Assembly: GCA_037379345.1 (NCBI GenBank)
Contig: CM074521.1
Location: 27,118,704-27,182,703 of the forward strand
Direction: 5' to 3'
DNA: 64,000 nt
Source: Perna viridis
Lineage: Eukaryota
Position numbers and translations under genes: made by a program. The notes under the pieces were generated by a model. That model saw only the letters and a program-made list of their open reading frames with translations, searched no databases and was not told the origin of the DNA. Positions 1 to 58,535 of the stretch are shown here, in pieces (position 1 is the first letter of the stretch; each line of letters starts with the position of its first letter).

Positions 1-89
1 ATCATTCTTAGATTCAGGCAAAAATAGGCATTACTATTCTTATCAGATTACAATGAAAATTTTTTTGCTGATTTTCATTTTTTTTTCAG

Positions 90-215
90 CCATCCAATGT
101 GAAACCTGTCAGAAGTACAATCCATGTATTTCTGTGTGTCCAAAGAAAACATGTGATAATAGACTTGTCTATGAACAAACCATCAAAGACTGCAAAGAAG
201 AAATGTGCTTTGAAG
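90..215 (+). CDS. Mucin exon 1 (in window): TIL domain N-half ([21 protein letters not shown]...)
   Basis: ttttcag|cc ... GAAG|gtaat; TIL-type Cys spacing. Confidence 0.88.
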
Positions 216-3200
216 GTAATGCAGTCAAACTAAGGTAGCTTGAACTCAAAGGGATAATGTGAAATGTGGTTGAATTATCTGGATTTCAAGAAATTGAAGT
301 TAGAAAATTTCTAGATTTATTTCGTTGCCTGTCTTAGTTTGTCTTGATCATTAGAAATTGAACTTACTACCTACAGAGTTTTTTAGTTCTAGAATATTTT
401 TCATTCTCTTTCAAAAGATAATGTTGATTTGTAAACCATAGAAATACTGTGTTTGTTTTTAAAAAAAAACTTCCAGAGTTCCAGTTTGTGGGTCAGTAAT
501 TTGCTTACATCTTCTTTGATGCTTCCATCATGAGGACTTAGGAACATTCTCAAACTTCAGTCAGTACTATTTATTAAAATCAAACTACCTAGTTAGTGAT
601 ATACTATTTTATTCTTATATAAAATTTCAGGATGTGATCTCAAACCTTGCCCAGAAGGAATGGTCTATGATGGAACAATTCAGCCAATCAAATGTATACC
701 AGAAGCTTTCTGTAACAACACCGCTTGTGTTATTAATGGAAGGAACTATCGTCAAAATGAGCCTATTCTTGATGAGACCATTTGTGATAAGACATGTGAA
801 ATCTGGTAAGTTTTTTTTATAGAGGACAAACATAATGGTAATCTATACAAATTTAACCTTTGACCTTAGAATCACTGAGAGTCTGATTTCAGAAGTGATT
901 AGTTGCTATTTATATGGTGCTGATACATAGGTTTGACATATGGGACAACTCGACCCACAGACAAGTATATGTCAATAAACTTATGATGTGTGACATATCT
1001 TTCAAAGAGACCTCTCTCGCTTATAAGTTCATGATTACACCTGTCTCTTATTACTAAGCAGAATTTATGGTGCAATAGCAAGAATTACAAAAAGTAAAAT
1101 AGCAAAAATGACAATAGTTTTATATAGGAACAATTACAACCTCATAGCAAAAATAACAATAACAAAATACCAACTAAAATATTGCAGATCTACTACAACA
1201 AAACAACTATAAAACCATATAAAAATAATGTTAATATATATTCCAATGTAATATTGCCTTAGGAACACGTCATCAACTACAAACCAACATAAAATCAAGA
1301 CTTTTAATCAGATTTGATTTCCTTCCACTTTAAAGCTGAGTTCTGCTGTTTCAAATCTAGATTTTACTGTATGTTCACTTCTGATTTTGTGAGTTTCGGC
1401 TTTTTGGTTTGGTTTGTAAAATCATGTATGTTATATTTGTATCATGTCCAGACTGAGTAAGTAGAGTGTTGCTACAGGTATCCCTTGTATATTAGTCCTT
1501 GAAACACTTCACAGTTAAATTACCAATTTATCATGCTTAGAACTATTTCAACACTGCCTAAACATGTCACCAAAAACAATTATCATGTTTTCTTGTAAAT
1601 AAGCAATTGAATTGAAATGAAAAGTTAGTTCTGGAATTGTAAATGAGAAGAAATAACTTCAGCAACATGACTTTTATATAAAGGCATTATGGTAAAAAAT
1701 TGAATAAAGTTTGCCCAAAGCTGAACAATACTAATTATGATTTCATTTGCAGTTACTGTGACAATGGAAAAATTATGAGAAATGGTTACTGTAGTACAAC
1801 ACCACCTGTCAGCACATTGAGTCCAAAAGTCATAATGACATTTTCACCATCTCATAGTCAAGCTGGATCTACCATGTCTCCAAGCATTGGAATAACCCAG
1901 GAACCATTTAAAGGAAGTACCATGACTTTTACTGGTATTGGATCCACTTCTTCACCAGGCCAAGTCACAACAAAAGCACCAGGCAAACAGAATGGGGATA
2001 GCTCAACTCCTAGCCCTAGTCTTGGTACTACTCAGGCCCCAATTCGTACAAATACTACTAGTTTTACTGGTATTGGATCCACCTCTTCACCAGGCCAAGT
2101 CACAACAAAAGCACCTAGCAAACAGAATGGGGATAGCTCAACTCCTAGCCCTAGTCTTGGTACTACTCAGGCCCCAATTCGTACAAATACTACTAGTTTT
2201 ACTGGTATTGGATCCACCTCTTCACCAGGCCAAGTCACAACAAAAGCACCTAGCAAACAGAATGGGGATAACTCAACTCCTAATCCTAGTTTGGGGCCAA
2301 CTCAAGCACCTGTTCTAGGTAGTACTGGAAGTATTACTGGTGTAGCTTCTACTGATGTACCTGACTTAGGTACAACACAGTTCCCTCCGAAAGAAACTCA
2401 GGGTGGCTCAACTCAAGGTCCTAGTCTTGGCTCAACACAGGCTCCAGTTAAAGGCAGCACTGCAAGTATTACTGGTACTGGATCTACTGCTGTACCAGGC
2501 AAAGTCACAACAAAAACACCTCCTAAACAAAATGGAGAAGGCCCTACTACTACAAATGCACCTGATCTTCGTTCAACTTTAACCCCAGGTCATGTGACAG
2601 GAAGTATTACTGGTACTGGTTCAACTAATAGTCCAGGTGTGGTCACCACACAGGTTCCCCCTAAACACACACCACAAAATGGTGACGGACATACAGGTCC
2701 TCCAACATTCCCTCCTAAATGCTTGACAAATGGATGGACAGGCTGGATGAGTGCCTCCCATCCATCTCTAACCAACAGCGGTGACATTGAAACGATTTCT
2801 GAACTTCGAAAGAAATATGTATTTTGTGACAGTCATATGTTGACTGCAATTCAGTGTCGTGTTGTTGGCACATCAATTATGTCAGCTGACTCGGGTCAAA
2901 AAGTGACATGTGACTTGAAGGAGGGATTAAGTTGTTTCAAGACTCAACAAGAAAATGAACAAGATTGTTATGACTATGAAGTGCGATATGATTGCGATTG
3001 TGGTAAGTATATCTTTCTGTACCTGAAGCAGTTTGTCAAGCAACTCCTGGGTTTACTATTTTTCTTGATTTTTCCTGATGATGAACAGTTCCTTCTTTTT
3101 TTTTTTTTAATTTTTAATTTCCAGAGAAATGTTTGGTTAGTCCTCATTTGTCATTTTGAACTTTTTCACCCACAAAAAAAATCAGTGTTTTAATCATTTC

Positions 3201-6200
3201 AATGTATAATAAGTGTACCTTTTTATTTGCCTCTAATTTACAAAGTTGCTCACTGATAAAGTACCAGTTTGTTTAAATTGTTAAGAACCTTGAAAAAGTG
3301 TTGATAATGAACAAATCTGATCACGTTTTCCATTTGTAATTATAAGTATATAAGAAAATATTAATTTTATTACCGTACTTCAATTTTTTTTCAGGTCTTA
3401 CAACACTTACTACAGAAATGACTCCAACACCTAGCCCAACAACTTCACCAACTCAGCATCCAGTGAAAACCCTTGGACAAATAACTGGTACTGGAACCCA
3501 GAAACCTCCCATTGGAAGGACCGAGAGTCCAACTCCAGGAACTGGAACCCAAAAACCTCCCGTTGGAAGTACTGAGAGTCCAACTCCAGGAACTGGTACC
3601 CAGAAACCTCCCATTGGAAGTACCGAGACTCCAACTCAAGGAACTGGAACCCAAAAGCCTCCAGTTGGAAGTACCAAGAGTCTTACTACAGGAACTGGAA
3701 CCCAGAAACCTCCCATAGGAAGTACCGAGAGTCCAACTCCAGGAACTGGAACCCAAAAGCCTCCAGTTGGAAGTACTGAGAGTCCAACTCCAGGAACTTC
3801 TAAGGAACAGACAACACAAGGACCATACCTCACACACTCTGGAAGCCCACCACCCTATGTATGTGTAGATGGATGGAGCAAATGGATGAACATAGATAAA
3901 CCAACTGTCAAGAATCCTTGGGAGATCATCAAAACAGGAGACATGGAATTGATGAGTGAATTAAGGTACCACCATAGTTTCTGTGCCAAACCAACAGCTA
4001 TTAAATGTCGCACAGTAGATGATCATAAACCATACACTGAATCGTCTGATGATAAAGTGTCATGTGACCTGATTGATGGTCTTGTATGTTCCAATGCCAA
4101 CCAGGGTGGAAGGACATGTTCTGATTACGAAGTCAGCGTCTACTGTGACTGCGGAGGTAAGTGGTCACTGTTTATTTTTTTAGATTCAGATTTCAGATAT
4201 CATTGGGGGGATGCTCTTTTTTGACATTTTAGTTACTGAAACTGTTTCAGTGAAACACTAACATGTAATTGAATTTTATCATTGCAGAATCCACCCCTAA
4301 AGTACCCCCAGTGGGTTCTACACTAGCTCCAGAACCCTCAACAACCCCAATCCCTGGTGTTCCATATCAACCCACACCATCATGTATGTGGACCCAATGG
4401 ATGAACAGCCACACCAAACTTATTGGCTCAAAGGGTGAATATGAAACCATTAGTAATCTTCGCATGAAATATGCATTCTGTGAGCATCCGGTTAAGATTG
4501 AATGTCGTGACATAGCAAGTAAAATGAGCTATGACAAAGTCAATCAACAAGGTGTGACATGTGACATCAACCGAGGTTTGACATGTGATGATATCAACCA
4601 AAATAGCGGAGCATGTTTAGACTATGAAGTAAGGGTTTATTGTGTAGATAATTGTCCCTCTGTTAGTCCAACACCAGGACCATTCATAACACCAACTGCA
4701 AGTCCAGGAACAGGTGAACATGTATCACCAACTGCCAGTCCAGTAAGCGGTGGTGCAAGCATACCAACTGCCAGTCCAGGAGCAAGTAAACAGGTATCAC
4801 CAACTGCTTCTCCTCCAGCAGAATTGTGTGTTGAGGGATGGACAGATTGGATAAATGCACACAGTCCACTGGGCACAACTGGAGATGTAGAGCAACCAAC
4901 TGATATACCTGGATATCCAGAGACATGTAACGAAGTAATTGCTGCTCAATGTATTGAGGCTAGCTCTGGTGATGATTATAAGAAGACAGGACAGAATGTA
5001 AACTGCAATGTAAAGGGCCTGACATGTATAAATGACAAGACACAGAACTGTATGGATTATAAAGCAAGATTCTATTGTTTGTGTAAGTTTACTTAAGTTT
5101 TAAGAGCCTCTGTTTGATTTCTATTTAGGCCTGGAGTAATTTTACAGTAAAATTTGAAGACTGGAATTCATGTATCATTTATGTGAAAATCATGTGTATA
5201 ACTTTGCCTGTGTAAATGATTCACTGGTCAAATGCTATTATTCTTATTTATGTATATTATCAATACGTGGATCTTATATATCTATATGATTTTTTTATTA
5301 GGTAAGAAGCCAACAGCCAGACCTCCTACAGGTATTTATATAAAACCAACTGCCCATCCAACATCTGACCATCAGGGTATTCCATCATTACATGTCACAC
5401 CATCTAGTGGCACCATTGTATGTGATCATGGTTGGACACAAGAAATGAACACTGACAATCCTAATGATGGGGGCAATGGTGATTATGAAACTATTCCTAA
5501 CTTGAGGAAGAAATATGCATTCTGTGCAGAAGAAAACATTATCACTGCCAGATGCTACAAAGCAGGTACAAATATTACCCATGACCACACTGGAGAGACT
5601 GTTTCCTGTGATAGAACTGGATTGAAGTGCAATAATTGGGAACAGTTGAACCAGTCATCTGGGAAATGCTCTGACTATTCCATTAGATTCTACTGTAATT
5701 GTAAATTCAGTGAGTATGATTTAGTAAATGTTGATATACATAAAGCACACAGGCTTTTCCTGTTTATAGCTAATTTATTTAAATTGATTGTTTTATGTTT
5801 TTATATTATTGAATTCAATATGTGTCATTCACAATGCAGTTACATTCAAGGTTTTTGAAAAAGTCTTATTGTAAACAAACTTATGTTTGCTGATTTTGCC
5901 ACCATAATATAACCATGAAAATAAAATGCTGTGAATAAGTGTCTTTATAATAATAAAACATCTTTATATAGTATTAGATGCGAAATTATATAGCTGCAAA
6001 ATTGTATTGACATACTAAATTGTGAAGATAAGAATCTATAAAAAACAGATTGGTTTACAGTATTTTAATCATTTCTTCTATTTTCCTGCACCCAGATTAG
6101 TTGTATAAACTACATTCCTTATTTATACTTTTAAAATAATCTAGCTACATCAGCCCTTACTTCTCATCCTGTACCAACTAAACCAAGTAAGGATTTCAGT

Positions 6201-54200: not shown

Positions 54201-57200
54201 ATGGTGAAACAGGTACGTCTGTATGTCTGTCAATATTCATGTTTCTCCTGAAGGGAGAACATGATTACCGGTATACTGTCACCACTGATGTTCAGTGGTT
54301 CTATTTCCAACTATTGTTTAATGGATATTAATGAAACTTTAAAGGGAAGATAGGGATCATATTGTGATGTGTAGGGATATTTTCAAAGGAAGATAATCCA
54401 TTTTGAGATTATTGGGGTATCACTGATAGCTGTCATAACCTTCCTTTCAGGTATCACATAAACAGATTTTACAAGAGTTGTGGTATTCTGTGCCTTGCTT
54501 TTAACCAGCAATAGTGAATATAGCATTTTTGGGGGATTTTAAAGTTTCCTGTATATGTAATTTCATTACATACAAATTATTAGTCCAGATAACCATGACA
54601 TTCACAATATGAAGTCAATCAAGTAAAATAAAGCCTCTAAAGACAGCATAATTATGTACACCAACAACTTATTTGTAATCACTTAGATAACTCTATCCTT
54701 TGTATCATGTAATATAGCCTGGTGACATCTGGCAGGATGGACCATGTAAAGCTTGCCAGTGCTTGAAGGGTACAGATGGAAATGCAGTTACTTCATGCCA
54801 GACACAGACTTGTCCATCATGTAAATTGGTAGGTGCTTGTATACAAGAATGAAAAAAAGGAATGCAATTTTATTAAACTAAGTAGATTGGTAGATTTACT
54901 GAAAGAAAAAGGGGATACAAGCAATATTAAACATTATAGACAAAGAGGTCTATTTTATACTGTAAAACCTGAGGAAGACCTAGGGGAAGGGACATAACCT
55001 TGAAATCAATGATATGTTAGTATCATATTCAACTTCACCATAGCCTTTCAAGCTTTCCTTTGAAACAGAATGAAATCAGCCCAAGTTACTTTGATGCATA
55101 CATGATATTGATATAAAATGGTTAATACAAATGTTCCAATGATTTTTAAGAGTTATGTACCTTACCCTAGGTCTACCTCCATTAACTTAACCCTTTTGGA
55201 CTGGAATGCATTTAGTTTAGATAATTATATGGTTATTCCAGGTTCAAAACTGATATAAAGGGACTTTTGAAAGTTTTTGGTTTTAACACGATTTTAATTT
55301 ATTCAGGGTCTGATTAAGGCTTTACTGAAATTTAAGGGACTTGTATACCACAAAGGAAACATAGAATGTGGAATACAAGGAACATCAAGTTGATTTGTAT
55401 AAATATTTAATGATACGAGATATTTTTTCTGAGATTATGCCAAAGTTTTTGTTTAGTGAATCCGATTTGTTTTGGAATATGCATTAAAAAATAAAACTGA
55501 GAAATTTATATGAATGAATGACCACATACTTTTTAATATTGGATTTTTGCACTGGGGTACATGTACAGGGTTTTATACTTTAACAGAGTTGCCATAAAAT
55601 AGCAATATTAAGACATGTATATCATTAAATTTGTAATATTTTTAGGGAGAAGTACTCCAAGATTTACCAGGAGAATGCTGTGGTAGATGTATGCCAAGTG
55701 GATGTGTTGTCAATGCAACTGTTTACAAGGTTTGTGCTTTGCCCTGTTTTATTTTTTGTGTTGTTTTTCTTTCTCCAATAAGTATAGAATGAATTTAAAT
55801 TTAATAGGAAATAATAATTACCAAGATTGTATTTTTTTCTCTAACTAGCTCTTATTTTTTGCAGTTTCCAATAATGAAATGTTTCATTTTATGGACTTGA
55901 CATTGGTAGATTTGTAATTTATTCTATAATATGGTGCAATCATTGCCTTTATGCTCTACTGGAAATTGAACAGTATTAAAGGAGTACAGAGAGAGGGATA
56001 GTTGATGTGGCTCTGACTAATGCTTCAAAATTTCTGATTTTGTTTAGCATAGATAGACTATTTTACATAATCAATTTTTCAAGATATTCTAACATATATT
56101 TATGTGTCCTAGATTTTAACTTACTTGGAAGTAAAAGTAAGGAAACCACAGATAAGAATGAGGAACAGGGTATCCATAATCACTACCCTACTCAAATATT
56201 TTACCATGTTTTATAAGAATGTTCCTAACTCTATTATAGGAAGGACAATCTATTCCAAGCAGTAAGAAGTGTTACTCTAGATCCTGTGGTTACATGTCAG
56301 AATCTCAAACATACTATATAATGGAGACCAGTACTATATGTATGCCTGACTTCAAACTGCCAACCTGTCCAGGCGTAAGTTTATGTTTTAAACATTTTTA
56401 GATAGGGACAAAATAGCCACATTCTAAAAAGTCAAGATGTTCATAGTTGACATCATTCTGATAATCACTGACATCACATTTTACATATTAATGTTGTCAG
56501 TGTACCTTGCTGATAATCGTTGACATGGCAGTGGATTTTACATATTAATGTTTGTCAATGTGCATTGCTTGTTTTGTATTATTAAAGACACATTTAGATT
56601 TAAAAAAAAAATTTTTAATTATACATGTAAACCTTTGACAGTCTCTCTGAGGGAGATCTGCTGCAGTCCACTTGATCAGAGGGATAACTACACAGGCAAA
56701 ATAATGTCATGTGATTCTCACCTGAATTGAACAAATAAAATTAATGAGTGTTCATGTGAAATTCATATGAACTTTTCACACTAAGTTCATATTATGAGCA
56801 TTTCATATGAAAATCTTATTAATGTCATGTGGGTTTGATGTGAATTTCATGTAAAGCTCAATATTTGCCAGAATTCAGGTGTTTTTTTTATAGGTTTCCC
56901 TCAATTAAAAAAAGGTAGACATAGCTTTGTACAAAATGTGTTTTGTGATTTTATTATTACGACCCCCCCACTTATTTACCTCCCCCCTCTTATTAGTACA
57001 GGGTTGCACTGCAACCACCTTGTCTGTCAATCAGTCTGTAACATATTTCTCAACTTCTGTTGGAGGGAATGCTTAGATAGTTGGTATATTCTTTTAAATG
57101 CAAAAAATTGAAAGAAATGGTTGACTGGGGTAGTCTTGGCACAATGTTGTGTGAAACATTTTGCTAGAACTTGTTTTAACCTTAATGCATTGTTATTTTA

Positions 57201-58535
57201 TAGAATATAACTTTGATGGACTTGACAGGATGTTGTCCAAAATGTGTAGTCAAACCAACAGGTAAACAATTATTGTAATCACCTCTACATAGTAGTGATT
57301 GAGGAGGGTTTGAAATCTTACCTCAACTCTCAGCTTGTTTAGAAATATTTAGGTCAAAAGATTCCTCAACATGAAAAATATAATGATGGAATATTTAATT
57401 ATTGTGGACACTTATTTTCACAATTAAGAATGTCAATCCAATTGCTGGCTATTTACTTTTCGGGACTAACACCTTCTCAATATTTATTCCATTATAAAGA
57501 GATTTACTTGCAGCTTATGATTTTATTTCTGAAAAAATTAGTGAAAATAAAGTGATCGAAATAAATTGGTTTACATAATGTATGAAAGATATAGAGTTGG
57601 CTTTTTTGGTGTAGCAATTTTTACATGACTGTCTTTTGGCAGATGTTTAATGGGACAGTGCTATCCAATTTCAGCCTTCCGTTATTTTATGGGACACTGC
57701 TATCCAATTTCAGCCATCTGTTGTTTTATGGGACACTGCTGTCCAATTTCAGCCATCTGTTGTTTTATGGGACACTGCTGTCCAATTTCAGCCTTCCTTA
57801 CTTTCAAAGATGACTTGAAAACAATTTGAGGGATTTTCATAATGGTTTGACACAATATTTGCCTTCACTGAAGTCAACTCCATATTGTTTTCATTGTCTT
57901 TATATTCGAGTTGGAAGGTATTGGATGTCAAAACTATATACCGTAAACCTCAAATTGAGATTTTTCTCAAATTCTTGTTTTTTTTTCCATATCAATTTCA
58001 AGTGATTTGATTGGTGAAAATTTTAGTTTAGGAAGGATTTGAGGAAAATCATAAATTGAGATTCTTTATGAAACTGAGTGCAGATACTTTAAGGATAAAA
58101 TAAAACTGAACTTTTAGGGCATTGATATTTTACATTTATAACTACACCAATAAATGGTACAATAAGATGAAAGTTAACTTCACTGTTTATATTACAGCAC
58201 CATCCCAAGTATGTTCAACATGCCAACCTAGACTCATGTTCAGAAATAGTACTCGCAGTGTTGGATTCTTTAAAGTAACAACTGCTACTGGACTGTTATG
58301 TCAAAATAAGGAACCAGTTGATGATCTTATGGAATGTTCTGGCTCATGTTCATCCACTTCACGTTACACAGCGGTCATGCAAGGATTTGACAATAACTGC
58401 AATTGTTGCCAGCCGCAATCTACAGAGACAAAGAGAATCAGTCTTTCTTGTGAAGATGGCACAGTGATAAACAAGACATATACCATGCCAAAGTCGTGTG
58501 GTTGTAGTGCATGTGGTGCTTCTCAAGGAAGATGA
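90..58535 (+). CDS. Giant multi-exon gel-forming mucin / hemocytin-like secreted protein, 5'-truncated (59 exons, about 5,420 aa in window): TIL, VWC-like, 18 CysD (WxxW), 7 FA58C, LDLa, PTS repeats, C-terminal cystine knot
   Basis: All 59 exons have AG/GT boundaries with compatible phases. Summed length is 16,271 nt (2 + 5,423 codons), ending at TGA 58533-58535. CysD, discoidin, TIL, LDLa and CTCK cysteine patterns are recognisable. Confidence 0.93.
631..805 (+). CDS. Mucin exon 2: TIL C-half plus VWC-like start ([15 protein letters not shown]...CIPEAFC...CEIC)
   Basis: tttcag|ga ... TG|gtaag; this frame is not shown in the ORF track. Confidence 0.88.
1753..3002 (+). CDS. Mucin exon 3: PTS region with 45-aa repeats plus CysD 1
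   Basis: Within ORF 1700-3193; tttgcag| ... G|gtaagt; GWTGWMS...[10 protein letters not shown]. Confidence 0.92.
1928..2310 (+). repeat. Coding tandem repeat, 135 bp / 45 aa, about 2.8 near-identical copies (degenerate copies to about 2670)
   Basis: ttt act ggt att gga tcc at 1928, 2063 and 2198. Confidence 0.9.
3395..4156 (+). CDS. Mucin exon 4: 17-aa PTS repeats plus CysD 2
   Basis: ttttcag|gt ... GAG|gtaagt; GWSKWMN...[10 protein letters not shown]. Confidence 0.92.
3487..3798 (+). repeat. Coding tandem repeat, 51 bp / 17 aa ([17 protein letters not shown]) x6
   Basis: Visible in DNA and protein. Confidence 0.9.
4288..5082 (+). CDS. Mucin exon 5: CysD 3, PTS linker, CysD 4
   Basis: ttgcag| ... 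T|gtaagt; WTQWMN and WTDWIN motifs. Confidence 0.92.
5302..5709 (+). CDS. Mucin exon 6: PTS plus CysD 5
   Basis: ttattag|gtaag ... A|gtgagt; GWTQEMN...[10 protein letters not shown]. Confidence 0.88.
5868..6062. mobile_element. Degenerate small MITE (tgtaaac ... gtttacagta)
   Basis: Short inverted termini; layout similar to the 10588 element. Confidence 0.45.
6145..6360 (+). CDS. Mucin exon 7: PTS linker ([10 protein letters not shown] repeats)
   Basis: ctag|ct ... T|gtaagt; open, Pro/Thr-rich, phase 1-1. Confidence 0.82.
6791..7158. repeat. Intronic minisatellite, 26-bp unit, about 14 copies
   Basis: cttgctgtctggagtgatctaattat repeated. Confidence 0.95.
7314..7446 (+). CDS. Mucin exon 8: FA58C 1 N-part ([10 protein letters not shown]...ASSS...[11 protein letters not shown])
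   Basis: ttacag| ... AG|gtaag; discoidin N-terminal motif. Confidence 0.9.
8164..8507 (+). CDS. Mucin exon 9: FA58C 1 C-part
   Basis: YIQIDLG...LQG...SLRFEVLSC; ttcag| ... A|gtatg. Confidence 0.92.
8949..9168 (+). CDS. Mucin exon 10: PTS linker plus FA58C 2 N-part
   Basis: tttttag| ... AG|gttagt; CYEPMGIE...[12 protein letters not shown]. Confidence 0.9.
9390..9713. mobile_element. Interspersed MITE-like repeat (tgtggcacat ... atgtgccaca)
   Basis: Inverted termini; homologous copy at 41013-41339. Confidence 0.65.
10056..10501 (+). CDS. Mucin exon 11: FA58C 2 C-part plus PTS
   Basis: ttcag| ... T|gtaagt; WIIVDM...TQG...GLRFNLLGC. Confidence 0.92.
10588..10761. mobile_element. Small MITE (TA|CTGTGAAAGT ... 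ACTTTCACAG|TA)
   Basis: 10-bp perfect TIR with TA flanks. Confidence 0.7.
10810..10950. repeat. Intronic minisatellite, about 31-33-bp unit, 4-5 copies
   Basis: gagagaaaatctcccacat repeated. Confidence 0.8.
11685..11829 (+). CDS. Mucin exon 12: FA58C 3 N-part (CVMKMGIE...GRLNP...AWIPS)
   Basis: ttacag| ... TC|gtaagt. Confidence 0.9.
12338..12786 (+). CDS. Mucin exon 13: FA58C 3 C-part plus PTS
   Basis: tttacag| ... G|gtaag; YIQVNF...AIRFNLLGC. Confidence 0.92.
13714..13843 (+). CDS. Mucin exon 14: FA58C 4 N-part (CLLTMGVE...QITASS...[11 protein letters not shown])
   Basis: ttacag| ... AA|gtaagt. Confidence 0.9.
14211..14719 (+). CDS. Mucin exon 15: FA58C 4 C-part plus PTS
   Basis: ttcacag| ... 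T|gttagt; WIQIDF...ALRWNVIGC. Confidence 0.92.
14960..15115. repeat. Intronic minisatellite, 29-bp unit, about 5 copies
   Basis: acagtggagtcactgtgttcacaccttca-like units. Confidence 0.8.
15168..15300. mobile_element. Small MITE-like inverted repeat (cagtttcataaaaatc ... gatttttatggaactg)
   Basis: Inverted termini; related sequence at about 57950-58080. Confidence 0.45.
15395..15545 (+). CDS. Mucin exon 16: FA58C 5 N-part
   Basis: ttgcag| ... AG|gtaat; CEIPMG...QLTASS...GGWIP. Confidence 0.9.
15775..16105. mobile_element. Palindromic foldback-type non-autonomous element
   Basis: Imperfect palindrome centred on gcgaag (atattgga...tccaatat; ttttcca...tggaaaa), tattggac subrepeats, ttgactaac...gttagtcaa inverted pair. 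Confidence 0.55.
16438..16692 (+). CDS. Mucin exon 17: FA58C 5 middle part
   Basis: ctacag| ... AG|gtatg; QWIQVDL...VTQG. Confidence 0.9.
16975..17858 (+). mobile_element. Helentron/HINE (pearl/DINE-like) non-autonomous element with about 160-bp internal tandem repeats
   Basis: T-run, then atgcctgtc, a (gtcc)n microsatellite and three roughly 160-bp units (17041, 17201, about 17360); 3' sub-TIR-like acagccgtat and short hairpin. Confidence 0.6.
18187..18361. mobile_element. Small MITE with ggctgttcca/tggaacagcc TIR
   Basis: 10-bp inverted termini. Confidence 0.5.
18637..19061 (+). CDS. Mucin exon 18: FA58C 5 end plus CysD 6
   Basis: taacag| ... AG|gtata; [25 protein letters not shown]. Confidence 0.92.
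19284..19510. mobile_element. Interspersed SINE-like repeat family S, copy 1
   Basis: About 220 bp; near-identical to 23728-23930 and the reverse complement of 26168-26362. Confidence 0.8.
19647..20000 (+). CDS. Mucin exon 19: PTS plus CysD 7
   Basis: ttttag| ... A|gtaag; WSPWVD. Confidence 0.9.
20826..20876 (+). CDS. Mucin exon 20: short PTS exon ([16 protein letters not shown])
   Basis: ttttgcag| ... CAG|gtaag; 51 nt, phase 1-1. Confidence 0.8.
20850..21225 (+). repeat. 38-bp tandem repeat derived from the exon 20 / intron junction
   Basis: accatcacctactcacaaggtcacag[g/a]taaggtcagat units. Confidence 0.85.
21484..21855 (+). CDS. Mucin exon 21: PTS plus CysD 8
   Basis: ttcag| ... CAG|gtaat; WGPWIN. 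Confidence 0.9.
22406..22753 (+). CDS. Mucin exon 22: PTS plus CysD 9
   Basis: ttccag| ... T|gtaaat; WSDWLS. Confidence 0.88.
22880..23070 (+). mobile_element. Degenerate HINE-like fragment
   Basis: ggtatataggaatca...(ctgt/ccgt)n...gattttgatgaaattt; related fragments near 25940, 41625, 51040 and 54250. Confidence 0.45.
23499..23546 (+). CDS. Mucin exon 23: short linker ([16 protein letters not shown])
   Basis: tttttcag| ... CAG|gtagt; supplies the last Cys of CysD 9. Confidence 0.75.
23728..23930. mobile_element. Repeat family S, copy 2
   Basis: caagggaaccaagg...gaccaggtgcaccggta. Confidence 0.8.
25011..25055 (+). CDS. Mucin exon 24: short PTS exon ([15 protein letters not shown])
   Basis: Poly-T then ag| ... 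T|gtaagt; 45 nt. Confidence 0.75.
25569..25798 (+). CDS. Mucin exon 25: TIL domain ([18 protein letters not shown]...CVQQSMCPC)
   Basis: ttcacag| ... CAG|gtatg; TIL Cys pattern. Confidence 0.88.
26168..26362. mobile_element. Repeat family S, copy 3 (opposite orientation)
   Basis: tactggtgcacctggtcc...ccttggttcccttgattac. Confidence 0.8.
27111..27228 (+). CDS. Mucin exon 26: VWC-like ([24 protein letters not shown])
   Basis: atttcag| ... C|gtaag; W...CxxCxC motif. Confidence 0.88.
27785..28066 (+). CDS. Mucin exon 27: CysD 10 (CNWTYWIN...[10 protein letters not shown])
   Basis: gtttag| ... T|gtaagt; absent from the ORF track (no start codon). Confidence 0.92.
28580..30646 (+). CDS. Mucin exon 28: CysD 11, CysD 12 and 33x12-aa PTS tandem repeat
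   Basis: ttttag| ... G|gtaaa; overlaps ORF 28699-30708. Confidence 0.93.
29440..30627 (+). repeat. Coding VNTR: 33 units of 36 bp in two variants ([12 protein letters not shown] / [12 protein letters not shown])
   Basis: Directly counted: 21 A-type and 12 B-type units. Confidence 0.95.
30929..31251 (+). CDS. Mucin exon 29: FA58C 6 N-part
   Basis: ttaaag| ... AAG|gtttg; GGWVAG...ITTKG. Confidence 0.9.
31788..31926 (+). CDS. Mucin exon 30: FA58C 6 C-part
   Basis: tttcag| ... G|gtaag; ALRWQLYGC. Confidence 0.9.
33384..34031 (+). CDS. Mucin exon 31: 12-aa PTS repeats plus CysD 13
   Basis: ttaaag| ... G|gtaag; WSDWIN. Confidence 0.88.
33439..33705 (+). repeat. Coding tandem repeat, 36 bp / 12 aa ([12 protein letters not shown]-like), about 7 copies
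   Basis: Visible in ORF 33338-34072. Confidence 0.85.
34059..34982. mobile_element. Non-autonomous Tc1/mariner (pogo/Tigger-like) DNA transposon
   Basis: TA|CAGTCGAACC ... GGTTTGACTG|TA termini; internal ctcggataactcgaac repeats near both ends; no transposase ORF. Confidence 0.8.
35579..35986 (+). CDS. Mucin exon 32: PTS plus CysD 14
   Basis: ttcag| ... G|gtaagt; WSTWIN. Confidence 0.92.
36217..36297 (+). CDS. Mucin exon 33: short PTS exon
   Basis: ttgtag| ... CAG|gtaaa; 81 nt. Confidence 0.8.
36833..37137 (+). CDS. Mucin exon 34: FA58C 7 N-part
   Basis: ttacag| ... AAG|gtaaa; CKTALGMEN...ARLNGPTAW...TTQGR. Confidence 0.93.
37469..37619 (+). CDS. Mucin exon 35: FA58C 7 C-part (QFNGNFD...[10 protein letters not shown]...AMRFEIQGC)
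   Basis: tttcag| ... A|gtaagt. Confidence 0.92.
37966..38070 (+). CDS. Mucin exon 36: PTS linker
   Basis: aacag| ... A|gtaagt; Pro/Thr-rich, 105 nt. Confidence 0.8.
38270..38770. mobile_element. Element with hairpins at both ends
   Basis: cgataattttc...gaaattatcg and agattatttaata...tattaaataatct palindromes. Confidence 0.45.
39186..39476 (+). CDS. Mucin exon 37: CysD 15
   Basis: ttacag| ... A|gtaagt; WDQWVN. Confidence 0.92.
40146..40354 (+). CDS. Mucin exon 38: PTS plus partial TIL-like Cys module
   Basis: Poly-T then gcag| ... ATG|gtagg; [20 protein letters not shown]. Confidence 0.87.
40400..40510 (-). mobile_element. tRNA-derived SINE fragment
   Basis: The minus strand has a B-box-like GTTCAAGTCCC followed by ggcacgacaaaaa; no complete cloverleaf. 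Confidence 0.45.
40735..40830 (+). CDS. Mucin exon 39: VWC-like ([21 protein letters not shown])
   Basis: ttgtag| ... AAG|gtcagt. Confidence 0.87.
41013..41339. mobile_element. Second copy of the 9390-9713 repeat
   Basis: Colinear similarity (aaaagctattt...taaagcatctgt...ttcatgtgccaca). Confidence 0.65.
41930..42080 (+). CDS. Mucin exon 40: LDL-receptor class A domain ([34 protein letters not shown])
   Basis: tttttag| ... C|gtaagt; LDLa consensus. Confidence 0.9.
42108..42238. mobile_element. MITE family K copy, one end missing
   Basis: Ends aagagttgtgtcccttaccctaggtctacctcc|TTAA. Confidence 0.7.
42921..43001 (+). CDS. Mucin exon 41: short PTS exon
   Basis: tttgcag| ... C|gtaagt; 81 nt. 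Confidence 0.82.
42975..43272 (+). repeat. 38-bp tandem repeat derived from the exon 41 / intron junction, 8 copies
   Basis: cacctacaacattacctccaagctgtc|gtaagtctaac units. Confidence 0.9.
44494..44778 (+). CDS. Mucin exon 42: CysD 16 ([10 protein letters not shown]...)
   Basis: ttgtag| ... G|gtatgt; 285 nt. Confidence 0.92.
45569..45667 (+). CDS. Mucin exon 43: PTS linker
   Basis: ttatag| ... A|gtaagt; 99 nt. Confidence 0.78.
46844..46858 (+). CDS. Mucin exon 44: putative 15-nt microexon (THNPT)
   Basis: ttttaatttcag|CCCATAATCCTACAC|gtaagt; phase 1-1. Confidence 0.6.
47158..47261. mobile_element. MITE family K copy, internally deleted, with TTAA flanks
   Basis: TTAA|GGAGGTAGACC ... GTCTATGTCC|TTAA. 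Confidence 0.75.
47342..47626 (+). CDS. Mucin exon 45: CysD 17 ([10 protein letters not shown]...)
   Basis: atatag| ... G|gtaag; 285 nt. Confidence 0.92.
48309..48380 (+). CDS. Mucin exon 46: Thr-rich linker
   Basis: ttgtag| ... CAG|gtgag; 72 nt. Confidence 0.78.
48449..48585. repeat. Purine-rich intronic minisatellite, about 27-30 bp, about 5 copies
   Basis: gatgtttgggatggggagagggagcttca-like units. Confidence 0.8.
49275..49403 (+). CDS. Mucin exon 47: PTS linker
   Basis: attcag| ... A|gtaagt; 129 nt. Confidence 0.82.
49475..50585. mobile_element. Non-autonomous Tc1/mariner (pogo/Tigger-like) DNA transposon
   Basis: TA|cagtcgactccacttaatcgcata ... tatgcaattaagtggaatccactg|TA; 24-bp TIR, 21/24 match. 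Confidence 0.85.
50739..51023 (+). CDS. Mucin exon 48: CysD 18 ([10 protein letters not shown]...)
   Basis: tcaacag| ... G|gtatgt; 285 nt. Confidence 0.92.
51400..51462 (+). CDS. Mucin exon 49: short PTS exon
   Basis: ttttacag| ... AG|gtatgt; 63 nt. Confidence 0.8.
52229..52291 (+). CDS. Mucin exon 50: short PTS exon
   Basis: tttttag| ... CAG|gtaat; 63 nt. Confidence 0.8.
52450..52600. repeat. Intronic minisatellite, 37 bp x4
   Basis: tctatatcaatgttgcctagattaaggataaataatc. Confidence 0.9.
52745..52957 (+). CDS. Mucin exon 51: Cys-rich C-terminal module ([11 protein letters not shown]...GECCPQYKC)
   Basis: ttttag| ... G|gtaagt. Confidence 0.9.
53265..53311 (+). CDS. Mucin exon 52: [16 protein letters not shown]
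   Basis: Poly-T then cag| ... CCT|gtaagt. Confidence 0.8.
53567..53621 (+). CDS. Mucin exon 53: [18 protein letters not shown]
   Basis: tttcag| ... G|gtaagt. Confidence 0.8.
54121..54212 (+). CDS. Mucin exon 54: linker plus VWC-like start (QVCKYNKNG)
   Basis: tttcag| ... CAG|gtacgt. Confidence 0.8.
54718..54828 (+). CDS. Mucin exon 55: VWC ([15 protein letters not shown]...CPSC)
   Basis: atatag| ... TTG|gtagg. Confidence 0.88.
54971..55180. mobile_element. MITE family K copy (reverse orientation)
   Basis: Reverse-complement match to 62644-62852. Confidence 0.75.
55646..55729 (+). CDS. Mucin exon 56: VWC end ([13 protein letters not shown])
   Basis: tttttag| ... AAG|gtttg. Confidence 0.87.
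56240..56374 (+). CDS. Mucin exon 57: divergent VWC-like module
   Basis: ttatag| ... GGC|gtaagt; open frame with KCYSRSC...CP. Confidence 0.8.
57204..57261 (+). CDS. Mucin exon 58: DLTGCCPKC
   Basis: ttatag| ... CAG|gtaaa. Confidence 0.82.
57646..57797. repeat. Intronic minisatellite, 39 bp x4
   Basis: ttttatgggacactgctgtccaatttcagccatctgttg. Confidence 0.9.
58198..58535 (+). CDS. Mucin terminal exon 59: C-terminal cystine knot (CTCK)
   Basis: ECSGSC...CNCCQP...SCEDG...SCGCSAC, stop TGA. Confidence 0.93.

What the first reader, a model, noticed from the sequence alone, without database searches (positions are those of the whole stretch)
90..58535. Giant mosaic mucin combining 18 CysD, 7 FA58C/discoidin, LDLa and a cystine knot
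Seen: one spliced frame of about 5,420 aa (N-terminus still upstream) interleaves PTS segments with 18 CysD and 7 FA58C domains and ends in a CTCK. Known: CysD + PTS + CTCK is the MUC2/MUC5AC/MUC5B design. FA58C in a VWF-family polymer is typical of insect hemocytin/hemolectin, and LDLa plus FA58C occur in SCO-spondin. Inference: this is a polymerising mucus protein with built-in arrays of lectin/lipid-binding modules, which could trap particles or microbes or act in clotting or adhesion. The copy numbers look high for this family. Invertebrate mucins with FA58C are known in general, so novelty lies in the scale and arrangement.
Basis: partly seen in the sequence, partly recalled or inferred. 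Interest (0 to 1): 0.8.

Follow-up and report, generated by a model that had tools for sequence, protein, structure and literature searches.

The report
Mollusc hemocytin-type giant mucin gene
The window holds most of one intact, roughly 6,700-residue secreted mucus or clot protein gene of a mollusc. The gene is real and impressive in size, but abalone, clams and other invertebrates carry the same design, and it was described in 2016, so it is a new member of a known family.

Summary
Exon-by-exon Pfam scans find exactly 18 CysD (Mucin2_WxxW), 7 split F5/8-type-C domains, one LDLa and a C-terminal cystine knot on the + strand. PTS tandem repeats lie between them.

Upstream of the window lie Sushi-EGF-Sushi and the classical VWD-C8-TIL D1-D2-D'-D3 head. 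The gene spans about 74 kb and about 6,700 aa, and a GT-AG exon chain with no stop threads through it.

The novelty claim fails:
- A RefSeq protein of Haliotis rufescens (XP_048245088.1, 7,888 aa) is collinear from the Sushi exon to the knot. It carries 19 CysD and 7 FA58C in the same order.
- Sinanodonta, Mya, Owenia, Limulus, Priapulus and Strigamia relatives ("hemocytin-like") share the design.
- Lang et al. 2016 already described F5_F8 plus CysD mucin-like proteins in Lophotrochozoa.
- Vertebrate MUC5AC-like proteins reach 32 CysD.

Real particulars:
- The gene has only three VWD (no C-terminal pair) and a mollusc-specific LDLa.
- It holds 18 of the genome's 22 CysD matches.
- Three CysD lie after the LDLa where abalone has none; two are 76% identical.

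No RNA evidence could be obtained. Function (a disulfide-linked gel polymer) is inferred. The scan's other notes on this genome describe different giant mucin genes, not this one.

The parts
18..805 (+). Last two exons of the D3 assembly (TIL3/E3-like, about 18-215 and 631-805). They continue from the VWD-C8 exons upstream of the window.
   Evidence: Collinear with Haliotis P0158 residues 1301-1400 at 59-70% identity. Pfam TIL is only weak. Splice chain.
1684..3002 (+). Exon with a PTS repeat (135 bp x4.5 at 1927-2535) and CysD1 (2735-2995).
   Evidence: Pfam PF13330 E 1.9e-19; TRF; genome scan.
3395..4156 (+). Exon with a PTS repeat (51 bp x6 at 3490-3798) and CysD2 (3874-4146).
   Evidence: Pfam E 2.4e-19; TRF.
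4288..5082 (+). Exon with CysD3 (4389-4643), a short PTS stretch and CysD4 (4839-5078).
   Evidence: Pfam finds two stretches, E 1.7e-34. An independent genomic read contig is 99.8% identical over 3769-5275.
5302..5709 (+). Exon with CysD5 (5433-5696).
   Evidence: Pfam E 2.3e-17.
6145..6360 (+). PTS exon (30-bp repeat).
   Evidence: 44% P/T/S; TRF; phase-compatible in the chain.
7314..8507 (+). FA58C-1 (exons 7314-7446 and 8164-8507, phase-2 intron).
   Evidence: Pfam PF00754 E 5.6e-15; translations.
8949..10501 (+). PTS plus FA58C-2 (exons 8949-9168 and 10056-10501) plus a PTS linker.
   Evidence: Pfam E 1.8e-17. The N-part ends '..GSWIPR' like the other copies. Collinear with P0158 and P0007.
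11685..12786 (+). FA58C-3 (exons 11685-11829 and 12338-12786) plus a PTS linker.
   Evidence: Pfam E 5.8e-19.
13714..14719 (+). FA58C-4 (exons 13714-13843 and 14211-14719) plus a PTS linker.
   Evidence: Pfam E 1e-19. The nearest solved relatives are factor VIII/V C domains, E 3e-21.
15395..19061 (+). FA58C-5 (exons 15395-15545, 16438-16692 and the start of 18637-19061). CysD6 (18782-19042) lies in that same last exon.
   Evidence: Pfam. One uninterrupted exon carries the FA58C end ('MRFNLLGC') and a whole CysD, so the two domain types are linked without any splicing assumption.
19647..20000 (+). CysD7 exon (19736-19984).
   Evidence: Pfam E 9.8e-11.
20826..21236 (+). Small PTS exons inside a 38-bp tandem repeat. 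Boundaries are uncertain.
   Evidence: Chain; TRF 20915-21226.
21518..21855 (+). CysD8 exon (21579-21836).
   Evidence: Pfam E 1.1e-15.
22310..22935 (+). CysD9 exon (22486-22740).
   Evidence: Pfam E 6.7e-20.
25550..27228 (+). TIL-like exon (25550-25798) and E/VWC-like Cys-rich exon (27078-27228).
   Evidence: Weak Pfam TIL, E 0.0067. Conserved at 42-55% identity in Haliotis, Sinanodonta and Mya at the same place. Also matches Priapulus hemocytin-like 2952-3025.
27785..28066 (+). CysD10 exon (27811-28056), the best-conserved copy.
   Evidence: Pfam E 3.4e-23. 61-64% identical to the mollusc orthologs. Matches solved MUC5B/MUC2/MUC5AC CysD, E 1e-9.
28580..30646 (+). Largest exon: CysD11 (28663-28935), CysD12 (29029-29292) and the main PTS VNTR (72 bp x16.4 at 29422-30605).
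   Evidence: Pfam finds two CysD stretches, E 6e-37; TRF; PTS segment of 445 aa.
30929..31926 (+). FA58C-6 (exons 30929-31251 and 31788-31926, phase-0 intron).
   Evidence: Pfam E 7e-13 for the first exon. The second exon was found by motif, '...[10 protein letters not shown]'.
33426..34031 (+). PTS (36 bp x6.5 at 33440-33710) plus CysD13 (33767-34021).
   Evidence: Pfam E 7e-17; TRF.
35579..35986 (+). PTS plus CysD14 (35728-35976).
   Evidence: Pfam E 1.4e-16.
36833..37619 (+). FA58C-7 (exons 36833-37137 and 37469-37619).
   Evidence: Pfam E 2.7e-19 and 9e-6.
37966..38070 (+). Short PTS exon.
   Evidence: 45% P/T/S; chain.
39186..39476 (+). CysD15 exon (39203-39454).
   Evidence: Pfam E 2.5e-17. 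Reciprocal best of the last Haliotis CysD.
40146..40830 (+). TIL-like and E-like Cys-rich exons (about 40146-40354 and 40735-40830).
   Evidence: No Pfam hit below 0.001. Conserved in Haliotis and Sinanodonta at 45-46% identity. Sequence.
41930..42080 (+). LDL-receptor class A module, single copy.
   Evidence: Pfam PF00057 E 1.2e-7, 32.2 bits against a cut-off of 24.1. The same single LDLa sits at the equivalent place in Sinanodonta and Haliotis proteins. It is absent from Limulus and Priapulus relatives.
44494..51023 (+). Three 285-bp phase 1-1 CysD exons (CysD16 44494-44778, CysD17 47342-47626, CysD18 50739-51023) with a PTS exon at 49275-49403. This block lies where abalone has no CysD.
   Evidence: Pfam E 5.7e-14, 1.1e-13 and 1.6e-12. 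CysD17 and CysD18 are 76% identical, and CysD16 is 54% identical to each. Haliotis P0158 has no CysD between its LDLa and VWC.
52745..56295 (+). C-terminal VWC-like Cys-rich exons (52745-52957 and about 54718-54828) and two small uncertain exons (55671-55729, 56240-56295).
   Evidence: Exon 52745-52957 is collinear with relatives from four phyla. Exon 54718-54828 matches the Pfam VWC stretch of Sinanodonta P0007. There is no direct Pfam hit on these exons.
58118..58535 (+). Terminal exon: C-terminal cystine knot (CTCK) and a TGA stop.
   Evidence: Pfam Cys_knot E 7.7e-7. Matches norrin, the MUC2 C-terminus and VWF CTCK structures, E 6e-8 to 5e-7. 52-54% identical to the mollusc orthologs' C-termini.

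Best explanation
The window contains exons 14 to the last of one intact protein-coding gene. The gene spans about 74 kb, roughly G000:C11:27,103,500-27,177,238, on the + strand. It has more than 60 exons and encodes about 6,700 aa.

It is the molluscan ortholog of the hemocytin/hemolectin branch of gel-forming mucins. Its order is:
- (signal peptide not found) Sushi-EGF-Sushi
- VWD-C8-TIL x2, TIL', VWD-C8-TIL
- five CysD with PTS
- five FA58C
- four CysD
- TIL/E
- three CysD plus the main PTS repeat
- FA58C, two CysD, FA58C, CysD
- TIL/E, LDLa
- three CysD
- VWC-like modules, CTCK.

Inferred mechanism, by homology with VWF and MUC2/5AC/5B:
- The cystine knot dimerises tails.
- The D1-D3 head multimerises through D3 cysteines.
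- The result is a disulfide-linked polymer.
- The roughly 1,500 aa of PTS carry O-glycans.
- CysD modules add weak reversible cross-links.
- The seven factor-V/VIII-type discoidin domains give multivalent binding to surfaces, glycans or membranes.

Most likely the protein is a structural polymer of secreted mucus. What is shown is domain content, intactness, collinear orthology and conserved cysteines. What is inferred is secretion, polymerisation, glycosylation, ligand and tissue.
For: Domain content.

One gene:
- A stop-free GT-AG chain of 60 exons gives 6,641 aa. The domain exons are mostly phase 1-1.
- One exon carries both the FA58C end and a CysD.
- A collinear tblastn chain of 44 HSPs to the single Haliotis protein XP_048245088.1 runs from the Sushi exon (L004:7483) to the knot (w58514) at about 47% identity.
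- Collinear chains from the Sushi or D1 region to the CTCK also exist with Limulus, Priapulus, Strigamia and Branchiostoma proteins.

Same architecture elsewhere:
- P0158 has 19 CysD, 7 FA58C and 3 VWD.
- Sinanodonta has 13 CysD, 5 FA58C, LDLa, VWC and TIL. Haliotis X2 has 12 CysD, 7 FA58C and LDLa.
- 12 of the 18 CysD are collinear reciprocal-best partners of abalone copies, so most of the array predates the divergence of this lineage from abalone's.

Polymerisation parts:
- The D3 C8 exon aligns to VWF 991-1127 and keeps the GDCxCxC cysteines. By my own numbering of that alignment these are the C1097/C1099/C1101 equivalents.
- The CTCK matches MUC2, VWF and norrin knots.
- The CysD matches solved MUC5B/MUC2/MUC5AC CysD.

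Literature:
- Lang 2016 (PMC4948705) describes the class.
- PMC6861317 proposes the CYS domain as a support for low-energy interactions in the mucus gel.
- Mucin (22.5%) and hemocytin-like proteins (4.1%) are abundant in a bivalve crystalline style (PMC8561940).
Against: - No transcript evidence. The only public contig found is unspliced genomic DNA.
- The signal-peptide exon was not located.
- The exon model is crude. It missed at least two exons (L003 about 8577-8733 and window about 54718-54828). Several small exons are uncertain.
- PTS makes up only about 23% of the protein, far less than in vertebrate gel-forming mucins.
- The fourth VWD of MUC2/MUC5 and the two C-terminal VWD of hemocytin are absent.
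- Several mollusc database models lack the VWD head. They begin inside domains without a signal peptide, so I read them as truncated models.
- The named relatives are all computer-predicted proteins. None has been characterised.
Confidence: 0.62

Rival explanations
1. Same single gene and same polymer chemistry, but the protein works as hemocytin/hemolectin does in arthropods. Hemocytes store it and release it on wounding or infection, where it aggregates cells and entraps microbes, and it is not a component of epithelial mucus.
For: The closest non-mollusc relatives are annotated hemocytin-like (Limulus, Priapulus, Strigamia) and are collinear with the locus. The FA58C domains are closest by sequence to factor VIII/V C domains. 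Bombyx hemocytin mediates hemocyte aggregation and nodule formation (PMC4015701). PTS content is low for a mucin.
Against: The gene holds 18 of the 22 CysD matches in the genome, so it is the only CysD-rich gel-forming-mucin candidate found in this genome. It has long coding PTS repeats. It lacks the two C-terminal VWD units that define the 3+2 hemocytin architecture. The two roles do not exclude each other.
Confidence: 0.28
2. The locus is two or more adjacent genes, or one gene with an internal promoter. For example, a VWD-head gene and a separate CysD/FA58C/CTCK gene may only look continuous.
For: Several mollusc database models (Haliotis isoforms X1-X8, Sinanodonta KAL3831915.1, Mya WAQ93449.1) contain no VWD. 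No RNA evidence is available here. A flexible splice chain can be threaded through many open frames by chance.
Against: Those shorter models start in the middle of an FA58C or TIL domain with no signal peptide. Haliotis X2 is 90-94% identical to residues 3098-7888 of the full 7,888-aa model. Full-length models from five phyla are collinear with the whole locus. There is no internal cystine knot, stop or start-like exon. The Sushi or D1 to CTCK order is conserved.
Confidence: 0.07
3. The gene is a decaying or unexpressed pseudogene copy.
For: No expression data are available.
Against: All 18 CysD, all 7 FA58C, the LDLa and the CTCK exons are free of stops and keep their cysteine frameworks after long divergence (24-43% identity between copies). 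There is no other full-length paralog in the genome. An independent read contig differs by only 0.2%.
Confidence: 0.03

Closest known systems
Haliotis rufescens 'mucin-5AC-like' XP_048245088.1 (7,888 aa; predicted RefSeq model, uncharacterised)
   Same: Collinear over the whole locus at about 47% identity. The order Sushi-EGF-Sushi, 3 VWD, 7 FA58C (a block of five, then two singles), single LDLa, VWC and CTCK is the same. It has 19 CysD against 18 here, and 12 are reciprocal-best and collinear.
   Different: The abalone protein is about 1,200 aa longer, with longer PTS and extra CysD in the middle. It has no CysD between LDLa and VWC, whereas this gene has three there.
Lophotrochozoan F5_F8/CysD mucin-like proteins of Lang, Klasson, Hansson, Samuelsson et al. 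2016 (PMC4948705)
   Same: This is the class described in that paper: three VWD-C8-TIL units, F5_F8_type_C domains, CysD inserted in the F5_F8 region, and PTS.
   Different: The paper gives the class, not this gene. The LDLa and the absence of the last two VWD units are not mentioned in the text I read.
Arthropod hemocytin/hemolectin (Bombyx hemocytin, Drosophila Hml; Limulus XP_022255312.1, Priapulus XP_014665852.1 'hemocytin-like')
   Same: D1-D3 head, FA58C after D3 and CTCK tail. The N-terminal Sushi is conserved in Priapulus and Strigamia. The sequences are collinear.
   Different: Hemocytin has a 3+2 VWD structure; this gene has 3+0. Limulus and Priapulus have 5-6 CysD, and Lang 2016 reports that CysD was lost in insects; this gene has 18. 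Limulus and Priapulus have no LDLa. PTS is much longer here.
Vertebrate MUC2 / MUC5AC / MUC5B
   Same: D1-D2-D'-D3, PTS interrupted by CysD, VWC and CTCK. The CysD and the D3 C8 module match the solved structures by sequence.
   Different: Vertebrate mucins have a D4 (fourth VWD) and no FA58C, LDLa or N-terminal Sushi-EGF. Their PTS is several-fold longer. Some have more CysD, up to 32.
SCO-spondin
   Same: A VWD-family protein that contains LDLa, FA58C and CTCK.
   Different: By established knowledge, SCO-spondin is defined by many TSP1 and about ten LDLa repeats. Here there is one LDLa, and no scanned exon matched TSP1. The scan's notes record a separate SCO-spondin-like tail 1.15 Mb away.

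Membership tests
Gel-forming mucin (MUC2/MUC5 type) | N-terminal three VWD-C8-TIL assemblies (D1-D2-D'-D3) | tested here: met
   VWD at C11:27108437, 27111765 and 27116442, with C8 and TIL after each, plus a TIL'. These lie just upstream of the window.
Gel-forming mucin (MUC2/MUC5 type) | Central PTS (mucin) domains built of tandem repeats | tested here: met
   Four coding tandem repeats. About 1,500 aa are at least 40% P/T/S and free of Cys. This is only about 23% of the protein.
Gel-forming mucin (MUC2/MUC5 type) | CysD (Mucin2_WxxW) domains interspersed in the PTS | tested here: met
   18 copies over the Pfam cut-off. They match solved MUC5B/MUC2/MUC5AC CysD.
Gel-forming mucin (MUC2/MUC5 type) | Fourth VWD-C8-TIL (D4) after the PTS | tested here: not met
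   No VWD match inside the window with Pfam in a six-frame scan at E<=0.01. None either with a local 21-sequence VWD profile on all ORFs of 20 aa or more. According to Lang 2016, MUC6 and MUC19 also lack it.
Gel-forming mucin (MUC2/MUC5 type) | C-terminal VWC modules and a cystine knot | tested here: met
   Cys_knot E 7.7e-7, with PDB matches to MUC2, VWF and norrin. VWC is seen only through orthologs.
Gel-forming mucin (MUC2/MUC5 type) | Heavy O-glycosylation and disulfide-linked gel formation | not testable with these tools
   Needs biochemistry. The cysteines that I place at VWF C1097/1099/1101 are conserved.
Hemocytin / hemolectin | FA58C (discoidin) domains following the third VWD unit | tested here: met
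   Seven FA58C.
Hemocytin / hemolectin | Two further VWD-C8-TIL units after the FA58C block (3+2 structure, Lang 2016) | tested here: not met
   There are only 3 VWD in this gene and in its abalone ortholog. Limulus, Priapulus, Strigamia and Branchiostoma relatives have 5.
Hemocytin / hemolectin | Collinear sequence homology with proteins annotated as hemocytin | tested here: met
   Collinear chains of 24-26 HSPs at 38-40% identity run from the Sushi or D1 region to the CTCK.
Lophotrochozoan F5_F8/CysD mucin-like protein (Lang 2016) | Three VWD-C8-TIL units plus F5_F8_type_C with CysD inserted in that region, plus PTS | tested here: met
   All parts are present in that order. Orthologs in Haliotis, Sinanodonta, Mya, Pomacea, Elysia and Owenia were found with the CysD profile.
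SCO-spondin | Long arrays of TSP1 and multiple LDLa repeats | tested here: not met
   One LDLa only, and no TSP1 in any scanned exon. Only the chosen open stretches were scanned, not every small ORF.

The most novel reading that the evidence does not exclude
This single gene may be the animal's only CysD-rich gel-forming mucin, since it holds 18 of the 22 CysD matches in the genome. It is also the direct ortholog of arthropod hemocytin. If so, molluscs would show an undivided ancestral protein that serves both as epithelial mucus and as a wound or microbe-trapping clot. In the mollusc orthologs examined, the two C-terminal VWD assemblies have been replaced by an LDLa module and, in this lineage, by three added CysD.
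Probability: 0.15. Interest if true: 0.5.

Novelty: new member of a known kind. Interest (0 to 1): 0.27.

Why it matters
The finding gives a well-delimited, apparently intact full-length locus for the main CysD/discoidin mucin of a bivalve-like mollusc. That is useful for annotation, because several public mollusc models of this gene are N-terminally truncated. It is also useful for work on molluscan mucus, the crystalline style, particle capture and hemocyte aggregation.

It documents that most of the 18-CysD/7-FA58C array is shared with abalone. It also shows that the mollusc orthologs examined have a 3+0 VWD form with an LDLa. It does not reveal a new kind of protein.

Tried and rejected
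- Transcript fragments. A word search with exon 4269-5093 gave only a 100%-identical ORF on a Logan contig. That contig is unspliced genomic DNA, 99.8% identical to window 3769-5275.
- Signal peptide. A hydrophobic-start scan of about 13 kb upstream gave no convincing first exon. The abalone N-terminus located Sushi-EGF-Sushi exons but not the leader.
- Pfam on small Cys-rich exons (2-235, 600-806, 26015-26434, 27036-27245, 40052-40381, 40735-40956, 52726-53037, 55646-55789, 56240-56398) gave nothing significant. The open stretch 26015-26434 was dropped by the splice chain and has no ortholog support.
- PDB sequence search of 2-235 found nothing. I could therefore not test conservation of the second D3 intermolecular cysteine, which by my own recollection corresponds to VWF C1142.
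- 'TIL/E modules are vestiges of lost D4/D5'. I reject this reading. They align to Priapulus residues upstream of its fourth VWD, so the lost units would have sat between the LDLa region and the VWC.
- SCO-spondin membership: rejected.
- Literature searches for a characterised mollusc protein of this architecture found only indirect proteomic mentions.
- The spliced (joined) protein was assembled only inside local scripts to count length, phases and composition. It was never sent to a search, fold or family tool. All such searches were done exon by exon by reference, so no whole-protein Pfam scan, structure prediction or architecture search was run on the joined model.
Full report
OBSERVATION

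The window is AT-rich animal DNA (GC about 0.31-0.42) and lies at G000:C11:27118704-27182703 of a 723-Mb, 46-contig assembly.

I listed stop-to-stop open stretches on the + strand and sent them one by one, by reference, to Pfam.
- Eighteen Mucin2_WxxW (CysD) domains were found, all above the gathering cut-off.
- Seven F5_F8_type_C domains were found, each split by one or two introns.
- One Ldl_recept_a lies at 41930-42085 (32 bits).
- A Cys_knot lies in the last open stretch, 58110-58532, which ends in TGA.

A six-frame Pfam scan of the whole genome recovers the same 18 CysD. It finds only four other matches anywhere. The seven FA58C domains here are the seven best FA58C matches of the entire genome.

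Two FA58C halves that the 45-aa ORF list hid were found by motif. The N-part of copy 2 lies inside exon 8949-9168, and the C-part of copy 6 lies at 31788-31926.

The PTS segments are coding tandem repeats of 135, 51, 72 and 36 bp.

The 18 CysD copies are 24-43% identical to the first copy, with W, G, E and all cysteines invariant. This is an old, constrained array, not an assembly duplication.

EXTENT AND GENE MODEL

I fetched the 60 kb upstream. The two loci nearest the window carry, in order:
- an EGF exon and a Sushi exon;
- VWD-C8-TIL, VWD-C8-TIL, an extra TIL (D'), then VWD-C8.

The D3 TIL/E exons are the first two exons of the window.

A simple dynamic-programming chain over curated open stretches requires GT-AG, matching phases and no junction stop. 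It threads 60 exons into 6,641 codons without a stop. Window exons are predominantly phase 1-1 (18 of 47), as expected for shuffled extracellular modules.

The model is crude.
- Comparison with relatives shows it missed a D3 VWD exon (L003 about 8577-8733).
- It also missed a VWC exon (window about 54718-54828).
- The small exons at 20826-21236, 52178-52357, 55671-55729 and 56240-56295 are uncertain.

The joined protein was used only inside local scripts. It was not submitted to any search, family or fold tool, so no whole-protein InterPro-type scan was made.

IS IT ONE GENE?

No RNA evidence could be obtained. The only public contig carrying an exon of the gene is unspliced genomic DNA of the same species. 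The case therefore rests on four indirect lines.
1. Exon 18637-19061 carries the C-terminal strand of FA58C-5 and the whole of CysD6 in one open frame. Exons 10056-10501, 12338-12786 and 14211-14719 carry FA58C plus PTS. The domain types are therefore physically linked.
2. A profile of the 18 CysD was searched against 1.84 billion representative proteins, and cluster look-ups followed. This led to Haliotis rufescens XP_048245088.1 (7,888 aa). That protein gives a collinear chain of 44 HSPs at about 47% identity, from the Sushi exon upstream (L004:7483) through D1-D3, every block of CysD and FA58C, the TIL-like exons, the LDLa and the VWC exon to the cystine knot (w58514).
3. Proteins of Limulus, Priapulus, Strigamia and Branchiostoma also chain collinearly from the Sushi or D1 region to the CTCK.
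4. The shorter mollusc models without VWD begin in the middle of an FA58C or TIL domain and have no signal peptide. The Haliotis X2 isoform is 90-94% identical to residues 3098-7888 of the long model. I read them as truncated annotations, not as evidence for two genes.

ARCHITECTURE COMPARED

Local HMMs were built from single-exon pieces of this gene. They count 19 CysD, 7 FA58C and 3 VWD in the abalone protein. The FA58C lie in the same pattern, a block of five and then two singles.

Pfam gives the following for other relatives:
- Sinanodonta KAL3831915.1: 13 CysD, 5 FA58C, LDLa, VWC, TIL.
- Haliotis isoform X2: 12 CysD, 7 FA58C, LDLa.
- Limulus hemocytin-like: 5 VWD, 6 CysD, 3 FA58C.
- Priapulus hemocytin-like: 5 VWD, 5 CysD, 7 FA58C.

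Twelve of the 18 CysD are collinear reciprocal-best partners of abalone copies. A second CysD subtype (copies 7, 8, 13, 14 and 16-18) is more fluid. Copies 17 and 18 are 76% identical. Together with copy 16 they occupy a place, between LDLa and VWC, where abalone has no CysD.

The abalone N-terminus (signal peptide, Sushi, EGF, Sushi) locates matching exons at L004:4818-4916, 5689-5802, 6260-6349 and 7483-7695. The leader exon itself was not found.

Vertebrate MUC5AC-like proteins carry 22-32 CysD. So 18 is high but not exceptional.

WHAT IS KNOWN

Lang et al. 2016 (PMC4948705, section 15) make three relevant statements.
[quoted passage not shown] '

The present gene is a member of that described class.

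Two things are specific to it and to its mollusc orthologs.
- The two C-terminal VWD units are absent. This was tested with Pfam and with a local 21-sequence VWD profile.
- A single LDLa is present. It is conserved in abalone and Sinanodonta and absent from Limulus and Priapulus.

The two internal TIL/E pairs are not vestiges of the lost units. They align upstream of the fourth VWD of Priapulus.

MECHANISM (INFERRED)

The D3 C8 exon aligns best to VWF residues 991-1127 and keeps the GDCxCxC cysteine triplet. By my own numbering of that alignment, the triplet includes the position of VWF C1099. From my knowledge of the VWF literature, that residue is one of the inter-subunit disulfide cysteines.

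The terminal exon matches the dimerising knots of MUC2, VWF and norrin. The CysD matches the solved MUC5B/MUC2/MUC5AC CysD. PMC6861317 proposes the CYS domain as a support for low-energy interactions in the mucus gel.

The FA58C domains are closest to the factor VIII/V C domains, neuropilin b domains, CASPR2, retinoschisin and lactadherin. From general knowledge, that subgroup binds membranes, peptides or glycans.

The simplest model is a tail-dimerised, head-multimerised, O-glycosylated polymer decorated with seven adhesive discoidin modules. Whether it is deployed in epithelial mucus or the crystalline style, or by hemocytes as in Bombyx (PMC4015701), cannot be decided without expression data. 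For comparison, a shipworm style proteome lists mucin at 22.5% and hemocytin-like proteins at 4.1% (PMC8561940). I favour mucus for two reasons: this gene holds nearly all CysD domains of the genome, and it has long PTS repeats.

ORGANISM

The best relatives are molluscan. Other notes of this scan call the genome a mussel-like bivalve and describe different giant discoidin-bead mucin genes about 1 Mb away. I did not verify the species.

VERDICT

- The structural interpretation is supported.
- The novelty claim is not supported.
- This is a real, intact and very large gene, and a new member of a known, already annotated but experimentally uncharacterised family.

Noticed in passing
window 217-600: An interspersed repeat of about 380 bp sits in the intron between the two D3 TIL exons. 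More than 40 copies at 72-78% identity are scattered over many chromosomes of this genome. It looks SINE- or MITE-like.
   Followed up: no
window 20915-21226 and 42975-43272: Two separate 38-bp tandem arrays (x6.4 and x7.9) have units that each contain a GTAAG splice-donor-like motif. One array overlaps small PTS exons. The other lies in the intron after the LDLa exon, whose own donor reads GTC|GTAAGT. The period is not a multiple of three.
   Followed up: partly
L008:8220-10000 and L007:1-1620 (G000:C11 about 27,066,900-27,070,300): A tandem repeat of about 3.4 kb, some 33 kb upstream of the gene, is open in all three + frames (translations such as 'MDGQTSLPLYTDGWRHHYHYI...'). It looks like a satellite and not like coding sequence.
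   Followed up: no
G000:C11:27011352-27011615 (-) and G000:C2:36466786-36498924 (-): These are the only CysD matches of the genome outside this gene. One complete copy lies 107 kb upstream on the opposite strand. Three partial copies lie on another chromosome.
   Followed up: no
window 6791-7158, 17037-17501, 52450-52604, 57646-57804: Intronic tandem repeats: 26 bp x14, 160 bp x2.9, 37 bp x4.2 and 39 bp x4.1.
   Followed up: no
window 26015-26434: A 140-aa open stretch with 10 cysteines lies between the TIL-like and E-like exons. It has no Pfam hit and no ortholog match, and the splice chain skipped it. It could be chance or a lineage-specific exon.
   Followed up: partly
Public protein models P0008, P0007, P0165 (Haliotis XP_048245023.1, Sinanodonta KAL3831915.1, Mya WAQ93449.1): These database models of the orthologous gene start inside an FA58C or TIL domain, with no signal peptide and no VWD head. 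They look like N-terminally truncated annotations.
   Followed up: partly
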